From NCBI GenBank assembly GCA_000388065.2, contig KB932201.1: DNA of 10,621 nt; one strand, given 5' to 3'. The notes beneath the pieces are model-generated. The model was given only the letters and a program-made list of their open reading frames with translations. It had not been told where the DNA came from and did no database searches. The position numbers were made by a program, and so were the translations under genes. The stretch comes from Fonticula alba ATCC 38817 (lineage: Eukaryota > Protista > Nucleariida). The stretch's first letter is position 1, and each line of letters opens with the position of its first letter. Of this stretch, positions 170 to 8,534 are shown piece after piece.

Positions 170-2164
170 ATGCCAGGTCAAGTGCCGCCACCCGGGCATG
201 CCGGTCACCGAGATGCTGCGGCCGCCTGCCGGACGGACATGCCGGTGGAGACGACCACGGCAGCCGCGGCGGCCACCACTCACAATGCCTCCGCCATGGA
301 CCTGTCTTCTCCGTCAAACTACCGGCCTCCTTCGCCGCATCTGAGCTCGAACTTCGCCAATTGGATTACCGCCTCCCTGGCGGCCGGCCCCGAGGGAACA
401 TGCATGACCTTCGCTCGGCTGGCGGCTGATGTTGTGGCACTGGGCCTGTCTCCGGAGCAGCTCGAGGCGGCCCTGGCCGCGGCACCCAACCAGCCGCCCT
501 TGGACATGCTGTACCTCCGGTGGCCGGGCTTCACTTCCGGGCCGTCGATGACGGCCACCGTCACCACCTCGGCCGGCCGGTCACCCGACTCGGATGCCAT
601 GACCCCCGGGGTCAGTGACCCCCGGCCGGGGACCCCGCCACCGGGCCACGACGTCGGGCCGAGCGTCGAGGACTTCGCCGCCGAGCGTGCCTCGTCTCCT
701 GGCTCCAACTACGGGGCCGGCGTCAAGCCGCTGGTCCTCCTGGCCTGTGGGTCCTTCTCCCCGATCACCAATATGCACCTCCGGATATTTGGTACGCCCC
801 GCGGCCGCTTCACTCTTGGCCGGCTTCTTGCTGGATGACCAGTCCTCTTCCCATGCCCTGGCGCCCTCTCCCCCTGCTGCTGCTGCTCCTCCTCCTCCTC
901 CTCCTCCTCCTCCTCCTCCTCCTCCATCCCCCTCTTGAGGAAGGCTCCCTTCTCGGGCGCTATGAGCTGACGTGTTCCCCTTCACCTGTGGACCTTGCTG
1001 CTGCGCTGCCACACCATTGCCAATGGCACAGAGATGGCTCGTGACCACATTCGCTTGAACCACCCCGAGCTGGCGGCCATTGCCGGCATCGTGTCGCCCG
1101 TCCATCCGGCCTACGCCAAGCCGAATCTCCTGGCCCCGGCCCATCGGCTGCGCCTCTGCCGACTGGCCACCGCCACCAGCGACTGGCTGGTGGTCGATGA
1201 TTGGGAAATGAGCCAGCTTGAGTGGACTCCCACCGCGCGGGTGCTGAAGCATGTTTACTCAACAGTCAACTTGAACATCCCGGCCGACTCGCCGGTGGAC
1301 ATCGGCGTCATGCTCCTATGCGGGGCGGACCTGATTGACTCGTTTAATGTTCCCGGCCTGTGGGCCGACGAGGATGTGCGTCTCCATTTGCTCTCTGTCT
1401 TTGTCCTCCTCGTTCCCTCTCTCTCTCTCTATCTCTCCCTATCCTCCCTCGCCCTTTTCCAATTTCTCTCCCTTGCCCTTTTTCTCCTTCTTCCAGCAGG
1501 AATGGACCGAACATCATCTAACACAACACGCCTGCCCATGCAGCTTGATGAAATCATCTCACAGCATGGCGTTGTGGTGATTGAGCGCCAGGGGACCGAC
1601 CTCAAGGCGGTCATTGCGGCCTCGCCCATCCTCTCCAAATACAAGGTACGTTTGTGCCGGTAGCATTGATACGCCGGGCTCTCTCATCTGCTAACCAGCA
1701 ACTCCACCCTCCATCCTCTTCCCTTCTCCTCCTCTCGTCGCTTCACATGCACCCACAACCCCCCGCCCCCCCCCCCCATCCATGCATACAGGATCGCTTC
1801 ATCGTGGTGCCACAGCTCTTGAACAATGATGTTTCCTCGACCAAAGTCCGGTGCGTGGCCTTATATTTGGGCTCCGAGACTCATGGAGAACCGACACACT
1901 GACACGCACACACACACACACACATACCCAAAAAAAACGCGCGCGCGTGCGTTCATCAACAGCGAGCTTCTTTCTAAACAGATGTCCATCCGCTACCTGG
2001 TCCCCGACAGCGTAGCTGAGTACATCGCTGAGCACAACCTGTTCAACCCGGCCGCCGCGGCCGGCACCAGTCCCCCCTCCTCGCAGAACACTTCACCGGC
2101 TCCATCCACAAGCCCCCCTCCAGCTGGCGCTGGTCTGCCGGCGGACCCCGGCTCGACAGGGTAG
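170..2164 (+). CDS. NMNAT: Nicotinamide/nicotinate mononucleotide adenylyltransferase, eukaryotic type; join(170..791,1032..1375,1544..1645,1792..1850,1963..2164); 442 aa from ATG170 or 400 aa from ATG296
   Basis: The spliced translation gives the family motifs in order: [106 protein letters not shown]. Four GT..AG introns (792-1031, 1376-1543, 1646-1791, 1851-1962) have phases that keep the frame; total 1329 nt. The start codon is ambiguous (170, 239 or 296). Confidence 0.95.
874..924. repeat. (CTG)4(CTC)13 trinucleotide tract in NMNAT intron 1
   Basis: Seen directly; it generates the spurious poly-Pro, poly-Leu, poly-Glu and poly-Gly ORFs in the track. Confidence 0.95.
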
Positions 2165-2186
2165 TGATCAGAAGGAGGCACACCTG

Positions 2187-2229
2187 CACACACACACACA
2201 CACACAGATATATATATATATATATATGT

Positions 2230-2262
<33 letters not shown>
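2187..2262. repeat. Compound microsatellite (CA)10-G-(AT)10-GTG-(CA)16 just downstream of the NMNAT stop
   Basis: Seen directly in the sequence. Confidence 0.95.
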
Positions 2263-2268
<6 letters not shown>

Positions 2269-2490
2269 AACACCCACACCTCACACCCATACACTACATC
2301 CCTTTCCCATAGAACATAAAAAAACAACGCGCGTGCATGCGCATGCGCCTTTAGTCATCCCTTGTCCTTGTCCCCATGCTTGGCCCTCGGTTTCTTCCCT
2401 CCCCACCCCCAATGCCAGGGCATACATGTATCTTCCCACAACACAAGAATACTGATTGTGCATGTTGATCCTTTTTGTGTGACTCGCGTC

Positions 2491-4272
2491 TCAAGCGGTC
2501 CGTGGCTTCTTGCGCACGGTGAGCGTGCTAATTGGCTGCGCGCGGGAATCGGCCGAAGCCGCCTCGGCCGCCTCCCGACGGAAGGTCAGTCGCACATTCG
2601 ATGTCGCAAGGAGGCACATGGGCCCAAGGGGGGGATCCGATTGATCGGATTGGTGGTCCAGCAGACCGGAGACTTGCCGCCAGAACCGGTCAGAGGCTGC
2701 TTCACATGCTTCGACCGAGGAAAAGTCCCCGGCCAGTGGGCTGGAGACCGGGGTGAAGTGCGGCAGGACTCCCAAAGAGGACAGATCCTCGACACCCAGG
2801 GGCCTGACGAGTGCCTGGCTGCCACCGTGCGGCTGGCCCTCTGACTGGGAGGACTGGAGGGCCATGACAAAGAGGACGGAGTCCCCGCCAGCCAGCACCG
2901 AGTTGATGGCCTGCTTCAGGGGGGGAGCGCGATCGGCGGCGATGGTGGCATTGGCCAAGGCGTCATCAGGGCCGAGGCGCTCCTGCAGTGGCTGTGACCC
3001 GGCGTCTTCCGGCCCACCAAACCAGTTGGAGGCCCAGGTGGCGTCCGTGGTGGTGCTGTCGCCCGGAGTGCTGCAAGCAAAGCCGATGCCCATCTTGGCT
3101 GGCAGGGTCCGACGAAGTCGCCTGCGAAGTGGATGTCAGCATTGGGCAAGAGGACACAGGGCAAGAGGACACAAGGCGCACATGGTCATCACATCGGGCA
3201 GCGCATGGAAGCACCGTCCAAAGCCCAGCGCGCCGATCTGCTCGACCAGCTTCAACACCTGTCCCCACCACTCGGCCAGGCGCTGATTCAGCTATTCGGT
3301 CAGTATAACAAGGGGCAGCGGGATCAGTCGACCTGAAAGAGGGAAGGCACGCACGATCGGGGACAGCTTACGATGGGTGGTTTGCTGTGGGCCCGGCAGG
3401 ATGGCGGAAGGGCAAACAATCTCGAGGGATTAGCTTGGGACTTGGCGTGGCCGGAGAACGTGGCAATGCGTATGCCTGTGTGCGGGTGTGCGGTTACATG
3501 CATGCATGTGTGTGTGTGTGATGCGCACCCGGAACTTGCGAGGATTTAGATCACTCTGAGGGAAGAGGTACCACGGCGCCGGTCGGGCGTGAACACGCAC
3601 GATCCGCAGGCCGAAGGCTGGCAAGGCACACGCCCCAATGAAGGCGGCCGTCAGGCCCTGGCAAATGGCGGACTTAAGCGCCGGCAGGACCGGCTCGCCG
3701 ACTGCCGTGGCAGGGTGCCCACACCCCGTGGTGTCGACCATCTCCAGGTGAACGAGACCCCTGCGCCCGGGAGAAGGAAGGAGGGAAGGCGGGCAAGCAT
3801 GTTAAATGGCGGTTGCCGGGGACCGGCTGGCCGATGATCGGGAGGCACGCGCGACGCACCGGTTGGGCGGGAATCGGCAGGCCGGCCCATAAATCCGCGC
3901 GGTCAAACCGGCAACCAGGGTGATTGCCGAGCCCGCGCCGGCCGCTTGCAGGGCCAGCACGGTCAGACGGAAGGCATCGGTGTCGGTAGGCTGCCCGGTG
4001 AGAGCACTCTCGGCGAATGACCCCCCGACATCGGGCGTGCCAGTGGCTTCAGCATGGCCGGCGGCGCCCTCGACCGGCAGCTCGGCCAGGCGAATTGGCT
4101 CGAAGACAAAGGCCAAGCGCACTTCGGCTGTGGCGGGCCCGGCGGCCGCTGGGACCACCGTTCTCGGGTGAACATCCTCCAGCAGCCGCGCAAAGAGGGG
4201 CACCATGGCCGCGATGAAGGGCAATTCCGCGGGGGCTGCAGCCGAGCTGGCCGGCACATCGCTGGAAGTCAT
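2491..4272 (-). CDS. RTT109: Rtt109-like (KAT11 family) histone H3K56 acetyltransferase; complement(join(2491..3121,3182..3291,3529..3760,3860..4272)); about 461 aa
   Basis: Splicing at GTGCGY..AG introns (3859-3761, 3528-3292, 3181-3122) joins four frames into one 1386-nt ORF. It carries Rtt109-like motifs in the right order: LVAGLTARIY, LVHLEMVDTTGC (yeast FVSKADTNGY), VHARPAPWYLFPQSDLNPRK (yeast FTRPASQYLFPDSSKNSKK), LAEWWGQVL (yeast LMKWWGFIL), RLGPDD (yeast LFPDD), LAGDFSSVEAC, and a basic C-terminal tail TLTVRKKPR (yeast LKPRKKAK). The exact start and the exon 2/3 junction are less certain. Confidence 0.8.
3144..3173. repeat. Perfect 15-bp tandem duplication GGGCAAGAGGACACA x2 inside the 60-nt third intron of the Rtt109-like gene
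   Basis: Units at 3144-3158 and 3159-3173. Confidence 0.95.
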
Positions 4273-4595: not shown

Positions 4596-4611
4596 NNNNN
4601 NNNNNNNNNNN
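4596..4611. other. Assembly gap (16 N) within a poly-C tract
   Basis: N run flanked by C5 on both sides. Confidence 0.99.
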
Positions 4612-4638: not shown

Positions 4639-4654
4639 CACATACACTCGCACA

Positions 4655-4714
4655 CTCGCACCCGCACCCGCACCCGCACCTGCACTCGCACTCGCACCCG
4701 CATCCGCACTCGTA
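4655..4714. repeat. About 10 copies of a degenerate hexamer (consensus CYCGCA) upstream of the orphan gene
   Basis: ctcgca cccgca cccgca cccgca cctgca ctcgca ctcgca cccgca tccgca ctcgta. Confidence 0.9.
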
Positions 4715-4773
4715 GCACATCTTGCCGGCTCTGCCCCACCCTCCCTTTAGACGCGCGCATCCCCACGACCGCA

Positions 4774-5677
4774 ATGATGACCGAAGATCTGGCTGCCCGG
4801 CTGGCGAAGATCCGCGCAGGGCTGACGGACTTCATGGTGGCGCCCAGCCCGCCTACGCCCCCGCCCGCGCCTCCTCTGCCGCCTTCACTGGCGGAGGATC
4901 TGTCAGCCCGCTTGCAGGCACTTTTGACAGCCGTCTCCAAGCCGGAAGTCCTACGTGGGCTGGCCTTCCTGGCTCTCCTGTTTGTCATCGCCCTGGGTGC
5001 GTCGGCCCTTGGGGACTGGCTGTCTCTTGCTCGTGGCCTTTGGCTTTTGCACGCGCGCCCCCCCCCCCCATCGGCACTTGGTTCTTACCATCCCATGCAC
5101 AGCCCTCACGGTCGCGCGATTCCGCCGAGGACCACCGGGTACCCCCGTCGGTCAAACTCCGACCACCAGCAACAGGCACCCTCCAGTGGCCCCGGGGCCG
5201 GCTACCGAGACCCGGGGCCCTGCCGATTATCCCCCCTCCACCAGGTCGCCCGGCTCCCTGCAGCTGAATCTCACGCCCGAGGCGATGGCCGCCCTCGCAG
5301 CGGCACCGACTCGCGCTCCAGCGCAAAACCTGAATGTCACGCTGATGGGGCCAGCAGTGGAGGGTCTTCGGTCGCGGCGGCCCCATGCCACGTCGCCCGA
5401 TGCCACCACCGCCACCGCCGCCGCTCCGGCTGCCGCTGCCGGAGATCCTCCCTCCAGCAAGGGGTGGAAGCCTCTGCGCCAGGTGCTCGGAAAGGGCAGT
5501 CGGACCGACCGTGTCTCTGCCAGGGAGGAGCCCAGCGGCGAAGCATCTGTCAACGGTGGGACATCCGATGCATCGGTGCCGGGCCATGCCTCTCCCCGAT
5601 TTGTCCAGGGCTTGGGTATTGTGGTGTCCGGACCGAGCCCCTCGCGCCTGAAGGCACACCAGGCCAGCAAGAAGTAG
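4774..5677 (+). CDS. Hypothetical single-pass membrane protein, Pro/Ala/Thr-rich; join(4774..4996,5103..5677); 265 aa
   Basis: A phase-1 intron 4997-5102 (GTGCGT donor, C12 run, CTTAC branch-like motif, CAG acceptor) joins two long ORFs in frame. It rebuilds a continuous hydrophobic helix GLAFLALLFVIAL|ALTVA followed by RFRR. No family recognised. Confidence 0.65.
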
Positions 5678-6302
5678 TACCGGCCGCTGCCTGTGCCGCC
5701 TCCTGGAGAAGGTGAAAAGCTGCCAGAGAGGGTGGGAGAGAAAATAGAAAGCCAACCTCCACGCCGGGTGCTACCACGCCGCCCTGGGACAGAAGAAGAC
5801 AGGAAAAGTGGAAAGGGAGAGGGCTGTATATTGGCCGCGGAAGGGGGCACAGTTGAGGGGAGAGTGCGAAACATGCATGCACACGCGCGCACGCACGCAT
5901 ACACACACGCACACACGCACACACCATCATCCAAAGCCCCTTGGAAGAGAGGGCACACAACCGGCCCCCGCCCCCAGGAGAGCGAAGCAGGCGGAGAAGC
6001 AGATGGTAGCGATATCGCACAAGCAAGGGGGAGGGGGGGGGTGGGGAGGGGGATTTACCCGCGAGCGTTTACAAACGCCAGCATGGTGGATTGAGGAAGG
6101 AGGAGAGCGAAGGAGGAAGTACAAGGGCAAAGGAGGGGAGAGGGGGAAGGGGGGGGGGGCCAGGGGGGCGAGGGAAGCAGGCACCCACGGCCCCGGGCTG
6201 ACGCGCACGCACGCACACACATCCACACCTCCGGGGGAGAGAGAGAGAGAGAGGGGGGAGGGGGGGCATGCGCGTGCTCCACATGCGCAGCAGACGGGCA
6301 CT

Positions 6303-8534
<2,232 letters not shown>

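What the first reader, a model, noticed from the sequence alone, without database searches (positions are those of the whole stretch)
2491..4272. Hidden four-exon Rtt109-type H3K56 acetyltransferase, possibly outside true fungi
No single ORF reveals this gene, but splicing yields about 461 aa with at least six Rtt109 motifs in collinear order. These include the equivalents of yeast D89 (VDTTG, 3735-3733), R194/Y199 (RPAPWYLFP), W221/W222 (EWW), D287/D288 (GPDD) and the C-terminal basic tail. Rtt109 is usually described as fungus-specific and is pursued as an antifungal target for that reason. If this genome is a non-fungal holomycotan (the style resembles Fonticula; inferred only), the Rtt109 pathway predates fungi. 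The protein is strongly diverged and could easily be annotated as hypothetical.
Basis: partly seen in the sequence, partly recalled or inferred. Interest (0 to 1): 0.75.

Follow-up and report, generated by a model that had tools for sequence, protein, structure and literature searches.

The report
Rtt109-type histone acetyltransferase in Fonticula
The slime-mould-like amoeba Fonticula alba, a close non-fungal relative of fungi, has a very diverged gene for Rtt109, a histone-marking enzyme widely described as found only in fungi, so the enzyme probably arose before fungi did.

Summary
The spliced minus-strand gene at 2491-4272 is real. The window is 100% identical to Fonticula alba scaffold KB932201.1, and F. 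alba lies outside Fungi (order Rotosphaerida). The gene is already annotated as H696_00894, a 468-aa "hypothetical protein". That public model has five exons, including a 30-nt micro-exon, not four.

Evidence for Rtt109 homology:
- Pfam HAT_KAT11 is the only hit (E 9e-4, 19 bits, below the 22.5-bit cut-off).
- BLASTP against yeast Rtt109 gives E 6e-5.
- hhalign against 68 fungal Rtt109s gives E 7e-6, and an HMM of them gives E 3e-7.
- The central block keeps R194, Y199, F201, S204, K210, L218, W221 and W222.
- The last 15 residues match the Asf1-binding tail of Rtt109. The tail block scores 14.7 bits and no shuffle of 2000 reached it.
- Low-confidence fold models still rank Rtt109 and p300 first.

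D89 (VDTTG) has moderate support. The GPDD = D287/D288 assignment is weak. K290, R292 and F293 are not conserved.

A sibling note on this same window flagged the K290-to-Leu change.

The parts
3860..4272 (-). Exon 1, from ATG 4272-4270, aa 1-138 (last codon split). N-terminal region including Y128, the proposed equivalent of family Y70.
   Evidence: hhalign extension aligns ...TARIY... to the family EVYVY (low to moderate posterior).
3761..3859 (-). Intron 1, 99 nt, GTGCGT...CAG.
3529..3760 (-). Exon 2, aa 139-215. Holds VDTTG (D147, codon 3735-3733) and RPAPWYLFP (R197 at 3585-3583, Y202 at 3570-3568).
   Evidence: Alone it gives a weak HAT_KAT11 hit. It aligns to yeast R194/Y199.
3385..3528 (-). 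Intron 2a of the public model, GTGCGC...CAG.
   Evidence: No RNA check was possible.
3355..3384 (-). 30-nt micro-exon of the public model (QTTHRKLSPI, aa 216-225).
   Evidence: It keeps the family's ungapped L213-to-W221 spacing of 8 (L222-W230). It adds 6 residues to a loop that Nadsonia Rtt109 also lengthens.
3283..3354 (-). Intron 2b of the public model, 72 nt, GTGCGT...CAG, with a CTGAC branch-like site 17 nt before the acceptor.
3182..3282 (-). Exon 4 of the public model, aa 226-259, RLAEWWGQVL... with W230 (3270-3268) and W231 (3267-3265).
   Evidence: Aligned to yeast L218/W221/W222.
3122..3181 (-). Last intron, 60 nt, GTGCGC...CAG, with a CTGAC branch-like site 14 nt before the acceptor.
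2491..3121 (-). Last exon, aa 259 (split codon)-468, plus stop TGA 2493-2491. Holds W288, GPED 295-298, GPDD 309-312 (D311 at 2967-2965, D312 at 2964-2962), L314 (2958-2956) at the K290 position, and the tail.
   Evidence: Apart from its own standalone ORF (P0001, the same sequence), it has no relative among 1.84 billion proteins; the one other hit, P0002, is a bacterial secreted lyase. The DD assignment is weak.
2494..2532 (-). C-terminal tail ISTLTVRKKPRTA (aa 456-468; R462 K463 K464 at 2514-2506), a candidate Asf1-binding peptide.
   Evidence: It matches yeast 421-ITMLKPRKK-429 at the six Asf1-contact positions T422, L424, P426, R427, K428 and K429 (PMC5861439). The family tail block scores 14.7 bits and no shuffle of 2000 reached it. 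The motif appears in 12 of 200000 composition shuffles.

Best explanation
H696_00894 of Fonticula alba encodes a stand-alone, highly diverged member of the Rtt109 branch of the KAT11 (p300/CBP/Rtt109) acetyltransferase fold.

Shown here:
- Homology to fungal Rtt109 in the catalytic centre, covering the acetyl-CoA and lysine-tunnel residues R194, Y199, F201, S204, K210, L218, W221 and W222 (yeast numbering).
- A probable D89 equivalent in VDTTG.
- A C-terminal hydrophobic-then-RKK tail that matches the peptide yeast Rtt109 uses to dock on the histone chaperone Asf1.

Inferred, not shown:
- The protein binds acetyl-CoA and is brought to Asf1-bound new H3-H4 dimers through its tail.
- It acetylates H3, most likely at K56 and perhaps at K9/K27, during replication-coupled chromatin assembly.

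It lacks the long Vps75-binding loop of Saccharomyces Rtt109, with 55 residues from D89 to Y199. A minority of the yeast-lineage Rtt109s aligned here have the same short form (47-57 residues), and a preprint reports that the Aspergillus and Pneumocystis enzymes lack the loop. Leu sits where the autoacetylated K290 should be, so its activation probably does not depend on K290 autoacetylation. Because Fonticula is sister to Fungi, the Rtt109 type probably existed in the common ancestor of Holomycota.
For: Organism and gene:
- The window is 100% identical to GCA_000388065.2 scaffold KB932201.1.
- The protein is XP_009493056.1, and the taxonomy is outside Fungi.

Sequence:
- Pfam HAT_KAT11 is the only family hit, E 9.1e-4, aa 120-236 against profile positions 64-165.
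- phmmer of aa 193-262 against 177,635 PDB sequences returns six hits, all yeast Rtt109.
- BLASTP against yeast Rtt109 gives 30.8 bits, E 6e-5, 33% identity over 78 aa.
- hhalign against 68 fungal Rtt109s gives probability 84%, E 7e-6. An HMM of them gives E 2.9e-7.
- In block tests, the central block scores 21.4 bits and the tail block 14.7 bits. No shuffle of 2000 reached either. For the N block around DTTG, 10 of 2000 shuffles did. All three matches are collinear.
- All family-invariant residues of the central block are kept.

Tail: all six Asf1-contact positions are conserved or conservatively replaced (PMC5861439).

Fold, from low-confidence single-sequence models:
- The Foldseek top 50 are almost all p300/CBP/Rtt109, best E 0.019.
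- In the Foldseek-independent VIA search, Rtt109 3cz7 ranks first of 48,161 chains, and five of the top six are KAT11 chains (four Rtt109, one p300).
- The nearest neighbour of the ESM Atlas's own model is a fungal HAT_KAT11 cluster.

Architecture: no bromodomain, PHD, ZZ or TAZ domain.
Against: - The Pfam score (19.0 bits) is below the curated cut-off (22.5).
- The C-terminal 209 aa has no detectable relative, and no profile match covers the D287/D288 region.
- Residues invariant in 68 fungal Rtt109s are not conserved in the best alignment: K87 (Met), P283, P289 (Ala), R292 (Asn) and F293 (Ala). K290, present in 67 of 68, is Leu. Q319/E320 is uncertain.
- Structure models have pLDDT about 35, and the fold-search scores (Z 5-6) are in the range chance can give.
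- The fungal profile is nearly all Saccharomycotina.
- Expression, splicing, activity and the presence of Asf1 in this genome were not tested.
Confidence: 0.82

Rival explanations
1. It is a true Rtt109 homologue that has lost catalysis. It would be a pseudoenzyme or scaffold that still docks on Asf1 through its tail but no longer acetylates histones.
For: Several positions invariant in 68 fungal Rtt109s are changed: K87 to Met, P289 to Ala, R292 to Asn and F293 to Ala. K290 (67 of 68) is Leu and P283 is lost. The DD region gets no profile support. The C-terminal half is an orphan in 1.84 billion proteins.
Against: The residues the literature names as catalytic (D89, Y199, W221, W222, D288; preprint 10.64898/2026.07.30.741489) all have plausible equivalents. 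One true fungal Rtt109 with a strong HAT_KAT11 match also has Leu at position 290. Codon-position GC bias indicates a maintained coding frame. The alignment of the changed positions is itself uncertain.
Confidence: 0.11
2. It is a stripped-down p300/CBP-type KAT11 enzyme that lost its reader and zinc-finger domains independently of fungi. In that case it is not an orthologue of Rtt109.
For: Foldseek ranks p300/CBP chains slightly above Rtt109. One published phylogeny treats fungal RTT109 as part of the CREBBP/EP300 family (preprint 10.1101/2021.11.30.470311).
Against: Sequence searches hit only Rtt109, never p300. The WW pair and the central-block spacing follow the Rtt109 profile. The Rtt109-specific Asf1-binding tail is present at the very C-terminus. 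No bromodomain, PHD, ZZ or TAZ domain was found. The VIA wide search ranks Rtt109 first.
Confidence: 0.04
3. The similarity is chance, and the protein is a lineage-specific orphan of unknown fold.
For: The Pfam score is below threshold. The structure models are poor. The word-index searches with the Fonticula protein itself, the profile search with its last exon and the metagenome scan found no relative of it.
Against: Two independent collinear blocks each beat all 2000 shuffles. Pairwise and profile E-values run from 6e-5 to 3e-7 for single comparisons. Three different structure searches converge on KAT11.
Confidence: 0.03

Closest known systems
Fungal Rtt109 (KAT11; S. cerevisiae YLL002W; PDB 2RIM, 3Q33, 3CZ7; A. 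fumigatus 5ZB9; C. albicans 7BWZ)
   Same: Both are stand-alone proteins of about 360-600 aa with only a KAT11 domain. The central block is shared: RPAxxYLFPxS...K...L..WW. So are the DTTG motif, the W-to-DD spacing of 23 residues, and a C-terminal hydrophobic-RKK tail a few residues from the end. As in a minority of the yeast-lineage Rtt109s aligned here (D89-to-Y199 spacing 47-57), and as reported for the Aspergillus and Pneumocystis enzymes, there is no long Vps75-binding loop.
   Different: Identity is detectable only over about 80 central residues plus the tail. K87, P283, P289, K290, R292 and F293 are not conserved. The C-terminal half is otherwise unrecognisable. The host is not a fungus.
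Metazoan and plant p300/CBP HAT domain (PDB 3BIY, 4BHW, 8HAG)
   Same: The same KAT11 fold family. The predicted model gives its best Foldseek scores to p300 (E 0.019). Pfam places both in HAT_KAT11.
   Different: No bromodomain, RING/PHD, ZZ or TAZ domain. No sequence-level hit to p300. It has an Rtt109-type WW pair and an Asf1-binding tail.
Fungal Rtt109 variant P0122 (uncultured yeast, Logan assembly)
   Same: Leu at the K290 position, and a tail ending ...VVRKKPKK that nearly matches the Fonticula ...LTVRKKPRTA.
   Different: P0122 is otherwise a normal family member (HAT_KAT11 194.6 bits) with R292, F293 and P289 intact.

Membership tests
Rtt109 (fungal-type KAT11 histone acetyltransferase) | Significant sequence or profile similarity to bona fide Rtt109 proteins. 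| tested here: met
   BLASTP against yeast Rtt109 gives E 6e-5. hhalign against 68 Rtt109s gives E 7e-6, probability 84%. The HMM gives E 2.9e-7. No shuffle of 2000 reached the central-block score.
Rtt109 (fungal-type KAT11 histone acetyltransferase) | Reaches Pfam PF08214 HAT_KAT11 gathering score. This is an operational cut-off, not a biological feature. | tested here: inconclusive
   It is the only family hit, at E 9.1e-4, but 19.0 bits is below the 22.5-bit cut-off. Yeast Rtt109 scores 387 bits.
Rtt109 (fungal-type KAT11 histone acetyltransferase) | Central catalytic and acetyl-CoA residues Y199, W221 and W222, with R194, F201, S204, K210 and L218. | tested here: met
   R197, Y202, F204, S207, K213, L227, W230 and W231 align to them. 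These positions are invariant in the family, apart from position 194, which is R or K.
Rtt109 (fungal-type KAT11 histone acetyltransferase) | D89 in the K-A-D-T-x-G motif. | tested here: inconclusive
   VDTTG aligns to ADTTG, giving D147, T148 and G150, in the hhalign extension with posterior about 0.7-0.8 and in the N-block HMM, whose score 10 of 2000 shuffles reach. Invariant K87 is Met. phmmer of this piece against the PDB finds nothing.
Rtt109 (fungal-type KAT11 histone acetyltransferase) | D287/D288 in the P-D-D-P-K-x-R-F motif. | tested here: inconclusive
   GPDD (309-312) aligns only in a low-posterior extension. No local profile hit was found. The W288-to-D311 spacing of 23 equals the family mode. 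P289, R292 and F293 are not conserved.
Rtt109 (fungal-type KAT11 histone acetyltransferase) | Autoacetylated K290. | tested here: not met
   Leu314 sits at this position in the best alignment. K290 is present in 67 of 68 fungal sequences, and one true member (P0122) also has Leu. It is therefore near-universal rather than strictly defining.
Rtt109 (fungal-type KAT11 histone acetyltransferase) | C-terminal Asf1-binding tail: hydrophobic residues, then R-K-K, near the C-terminus. | tested here: met
   STLTVRKK at 457-464 covers yeast T422, L424, P426, R427, K428 and K429 (PMC5861439). The tail block scores 14.7 bits and no shuffle of 2000 reached it. Six residues follow R462, against 2-9 in most fungal members. 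Actual binding to Asf1 was not tested.
Rtt109 (fungal-type KAT11 histone acetyltransferase) | KAT11 three-dimensional fold. | tested here: inconclusive
   The models have pLDDT about 35. Even so, KAT11 chains dominate the Foldseek list, Rtt109 ranks first of 48,161 chains in the VIA wide search at Z 5.8, and the ESM Atlas neighbour is a fungal KAT11 cluster with TM 0.34-0.40. The scores themselves are in the chance range.
Rtt109 (fungal-type KAT11 histone acetyltransferase) | Asf1- or Vps75-stimulated acetylation of H3K56 (and K9/K27). | not testable with these tools
   Needs biochemistry or genetics.
p300/CBP | KAT11 domain flanked by bromodomain, RING/PHD, ZZ and TAZ domains. | tested here: not met
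   Pfam finds no such domain in the 468-aa protein at E up to 10.

The most novel reading that the evidence does not exclude
Fonticula's protein is a working, Asf1-dependent H3K56 acetyltransferase and the deepest-branching Rtt109 known. In that case the Rtt109-Asf1 pathway, docking tail included, was already in place in the common ancestor of Fungi and nucleariids. K290 autoacetylation and the Vps75 loop would then be later fungal additions, and 'fungus-specific' should read 'Holomycota-specific'.
Probability: 0.5. Interest if true: 0.55.

Novelty: new member of a known kind. Interest (0 to 1): 0.5.

Why it matters
Papers read here describe Rtt109 as fungus-specific or found only in fungi, and cite it as a possible antifungal target for that reason. 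A recognisable Rtt109 with the Asf1-docking tail in Fonticula alba moves the enzyme's origin back to before the split of Fungi from nucleariids. It also gives an outgroup for asking how Rtt109 diverged from p300/CBP, and which features are ancestral (the tail) or added later (the Vps75 loop, K290 autoacetylation). The drug-target logic is unaffected, since animals still lack the enzyme. The case also shows that gathering-threshold domain surveys can miss fast-evolving members: this protein has no Pfam hit on record. No paper in the searched library mentions Rtt109 together with Fonticula.

Tried and rejected
- **Exon-by-exon Pfam:** only a 10-bit KAT11 hit, for exon 2.
- **Exon-by-exon PDB phmmer:** noise only, from antibody light chains and alkaline phosphatase. 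Pieces around VDTTG and GPDD found nothing relevant.
- **Full HMMER search:** It found only the protein itself plus an unrelated bacterial lyase. With hindsight the central part would have been the better query.
- **Word-index searches** with the whole protein and with aa 120-245: nothing.
- **Metagenome scan** for relatives: nothing.
- **ESM Atlas search by features:** no usable hit.
- **AlphaFold2:** both single-sequence runs (whole protein and aa 96-345) gave pLDDT about 35. The trimmed model hit only generic GNAT, HAT1 and p300 chains weakly. The atlas shape search gave HAT1 at TM 0.28.
- **RNA evidence:** Two Logan contigs that carry the last exon are unspliced and collinear with the genome, so they say nothing about splicing.
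- **Alternative DD motif:** GPED (295-298) was considered as the D287/D288 equivalent. It was set aside because the W288-to-D311 spacing (23) matches the family mode and hhalign picks GPDD.
- **Joined model:** Its exons were searched by reference, and the public protein record served as the full-length query.
Full report
**Observation**

On the minus strand between 4272 and 2491 there are several open stretches in one orientation, but no single ORF covers them. Its exons are 4272-3860, 3760-3529, 3291-3182 and 3121-2491, which is 1386 nt, or 461 codons plus the stop.

- Every intron starts GTGCG[TC]. The first intron of the neighbouring Hsp60 gene has the same donor.
- Two introns carry a CTGAC branch-like site.
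- GC3 exceeds GC2 in all exons.

**Organism and public record**

A profile search with the last exon returned a 200-aa ORF fragment. Its 90%-identity cluster also holds a 468-aa protein, KCV73355.1 / XP_009493056.1 / A0A058ZG34, "hypothetical protein H696_00894 [Fonticula alba]".

- That protein is encoded on NCBI assembly GCA_000388065.2, scaffold KB932201.1, with no Pfam hit on record.
- The whole window is 100% identical to that scaffold.
- NCBI taxonomy places Fonticula alba in Opisthokonta, order Rotosphaerida, outside Fungi.

The gene is not unannotated, but it is unnamed.

**Gene model**

The public protein maps to five exons: 4272-3860, 3760-3529, 3384-3355, 3282-3182 and 3121-2491. 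A form that skips the micro-exon would also stay in frame.

I could not test the junctions:
- Two Logan contigs covering the last exon are collinear with the genome and uninformative.

Indirect arguments point both ways:
- The public model keeps the family's invariant 8-residue spacing from L213 to W221 without a gap (L222 to W230).
- Nadsonia Rtt109 has a 4-residue insertion in the same loop, so insertions there are tolerated.

I favour the public model at roughly 65%. All conserved residues are the same in either model. Its exons were searched by reference, and the stored public protein (P0003) was used as the full-length query.

**Is it a KAT11/Rtt109 protein?**

Exon by exon, only exon 2 gave a faint HAT_KAT11 hit (E 0.37). 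PDB searches with single exons gave noise.

The full-length public protein gives HAT_KAT11 as its only Pfam hit. The hit has E 9.1e-4 and 19.0 bits, and covers aa 120-236 against profile positions 64-165. It is below the 22.5-bit gathering score.

phmmer of aa 193-262 against 177,635 PDB sequences returned six hits, all yeast Rtt109. They align RPAPWYLFP...RLAEWWG to yeast T193-D227, so R197 = R194, Y202 = Y199 and W230/W231 = W221/W222.

To obtain family sequences by reference, I scanned metagenome contigs with a degenerate DNA pattern taken from that alignment.
- One of the 19 loci found, L012, is a Saccharomyces contig carrying the 436-aa RTT109 gene. It scores 387 bits on HAT_KAT11.
- BLASTP of the Fonticula protein against it gives 30.8 bits, E 6e-5, 33% identity over aa 159-235.
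- A word-index search from it gave 120 fungal Rtt109s, of which 68 were aligned (A1).
- hhalign of P0003 against A1 gives probability 84% and E 7e-6.
- An HMM of A1 gives E 2.9e-7 for the single comparison.

**Block tests**

I built sub-profiles of A1 and scored them against the collinear part of P0003 and against 2000 shuffles of that part.

| Block (yeast residues) | Score | Shuffles reaching it | Match in P0003 |
|---|---|---|---|
| Central (185-235) | 21.4 bits | 0 of 2000 (best shuffle 6.1) | RPAPWYLFP...EWWG |
| C-terminal tail (405-436) | 14.7 bits | 0 of 2000 (best shuffle 8.0) | AQPISTLTVRKKPRT against consensus vntLttLvvRKKpKk |
| N-terminal (55-110) | 0.7 bits | 10 of 2000 | DTTG at 147-150 |
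| DD region (255-335) | no support | not applicable | none |

This gives two strong matches and one moderate one, in the right order. The tail is the more telling of the two strong ones, because it is specific to Rtt109 and absent from p300.

**The tail**

Lercher et al. (PMC5861439) solved yeast Asf1 bound to Rtt109 419-LAITMLKPRKKAKAL-433.
- T422, L424 and P426 make the hydrophobic contacts.
- R427, K428 and K429 make the ionic contacts, and charge reversal at these positions abolishes binding.
- The general Asf1-docking motif is hydrophobic-x-hydrophobic-R-basic.

Fonticula ends ...ISTLTVRKKPRTA. Anchoring the alignment on R462 gives S457, L459, V461, R462, K463 and K464 at those six positions. 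Six residues follow R462, against 2-9 in most fungal members. The protein has only eight lysines in all. The pattern appears in the last 16 residues in 12 of 200000 composition-preserving shuffles. That pattern was chosen after seeing the sequence.

**Residue inventory against 68 fungal sequences**

- **Kept:** Y70 (Y128, one of only two tyrosines), D89, T90, G92, R194, Y199, F201, S204, N207, K210, L218, W221, W222, P286, D287, D288, R427, K428 and K429. W264 is probably kept as W288, since the W-to-DD spacing of 23 equals the family mode.
- **Not kept:** K87 (Met145), P283, P289 (Ala313), K290 (Leu314), R292 (Asn316) and F293 (Ala317). Q319/E320 is uncertain.

The DD assignment rests on a low-posterior hhalign extension and on spacing only. 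Leu at the K290 position agrees with a sibling first-stage note on this window. It also has a precedent in one genuine fungal Rtt109, P0122, which scores 194.6 bits on HAT_KAT11 and ends VVRKKPKK.

The D89-to-Y199 distance is 55 residues. This puts the protein in the short-loop class (47-57) and not the long Vps75-loop class (97-137). A preprint reports that A. fumigatus and P. carinii Rtt109 also lack that loop, and lists D89, Y199, W221, W222 and D288 as the conserved catalytic residues (10.64898/2026.07.30.741489).

**Fold**

Single-sequence AlphaFold2 models are poor, with pLDDT 34.9 and 36.2. The fold evidence is supportive only.

- About 43 of the top 50 Foldseek hits among 350,542 chains are p300, CBP or Rtt109. 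The best has E 0.019 and probability 0.94.
- The Foldseek-independent VIA search ranks Rtt109 3cz7 first of 48,161 chains: Z 5.8, 173 residues aligned, model 29-274 against Rtt109 1-258. Three more Rtt109 chains and one p300 chain are in the top six, followed by HAT1 and many GNATs.
- The ESM Atlas's own model of this protein has a fungal HAT_KAT11 cluster as nearest neighbour, at TM 0.34-0.40.

The absolute scores are in the range chance can produce. What carries weight is that three searches converge on one small family.

**Relatives and literature**

- The last exon has no relative among 1.84 billion representative proteins apart from its own standalone ORF (P0001, the same sequence); the one other hit is an unrelated bacterial lyase.
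- Word-index searches and a metagenome scan found nothing.
- No paper in the library holds both "Rtt109" and "Fonticula".
- Recent papers still call Rtt109 fungus-specific or exclusive to fungi.

**Mechanism**

Shown: homology of the catalytic centre and of the Asf1-docking tail.

Inferred from what is known of Rtt109: the protein binds acetyl-CoA in the pocket lined by the Y199/W221/W222 equivalents. It is recruited through its tail to Asf1 carrying a new H3-H4 dimer. It then acetylates H3, most likely at K56. With no Vps75 loop and no K290, its activation would be Asf1-centred and independent of K290 autoacetylation.

The main rival is a catalytically dead relic (about 11%), given the lost invariant residues. 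An independently reduced p300/CBP (about 4%) and chance similarity (about 3%) are unlikely.

**Verdict**

This is a new, very divergent member of a known family in a non-fungal holomycotan. It moves the origin of the Rtt109 type to before the Fungi-nucleariid split. It is an incremental evolutionary finding and not a new kind of system, so I score interest at 0.5.

Noticed in passing
window 3355-3384 (-): The public gene model contains a 30-nt micro-exon (QTTHRKLSPI) with its own GTGCGT donor.
   Followed up: partly
window 6303-8480 (-): Mitochondrial-type Hsp60 gene with at least three exons. The first and last exons hit Cpn60_TCP1 at E 1e-32 and 3e-33. The first intron donor is GTGCGT at 7799, and the protein ends in a GGM repeat. 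The annotated 596-aa product has no Pfam hit on record in the collection, which looks like a gap in the precomputed table.
   Followed up: partly
window 170-2164 (+): Spliced gene for a 442-aa cytidylyltransferase-like protein that reads like an NMN adenylyltransferase. It converges tail-to-tail with the Rtt109-like gene.
   Followed up: partly
window 4774-5677 (+): Divergently transcribed neighbour encoding a 265-aa protein with no Pfam hit. It shares a roughly 500-bp promoter region with the Rtt109-like gene. That region holds an assembly gap (N run 4596-4611) and long GT/CA-type microsatellites.
   Followed up: no
window 1850-2330, 4650-4720, 5890-6220: Abundant (CA)n/(TG)n and related dinucleotide microsatellites in intergenic and intronic DNA. 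They create long spurious ORFs rich in His-Thr or Cys-Val.
   Followed up: no
P0122 (Logan assembly, unnamed yeast): A bona fide fungal Rtt109 (HAT_KAT11 194.6 bits) has Leu in place of the autoacetylated K290 (motif SDDPLTRF). Loss of this lysine is therefore not unique to Fonticula.
   Followed up: partly
L012 (ERZ794936.3 NODE-3, 348 kb): A metagenome-assembly contig that is plainly Saccharomyces chromosome XII DNA. It carries RTT109 next to a 757-aa dynamin-like gene.
   Followed up: no
L002 and L003 (Logan contigs of SRR548319 and SRR35359246): Both contigs carry the last exon and are collinear with the genome, introns included. A gene caller run on them produced the 200-aa fragment that represents this protein's cluster, which hides the full-length record from length-filtered searches.
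   Followed up: yes
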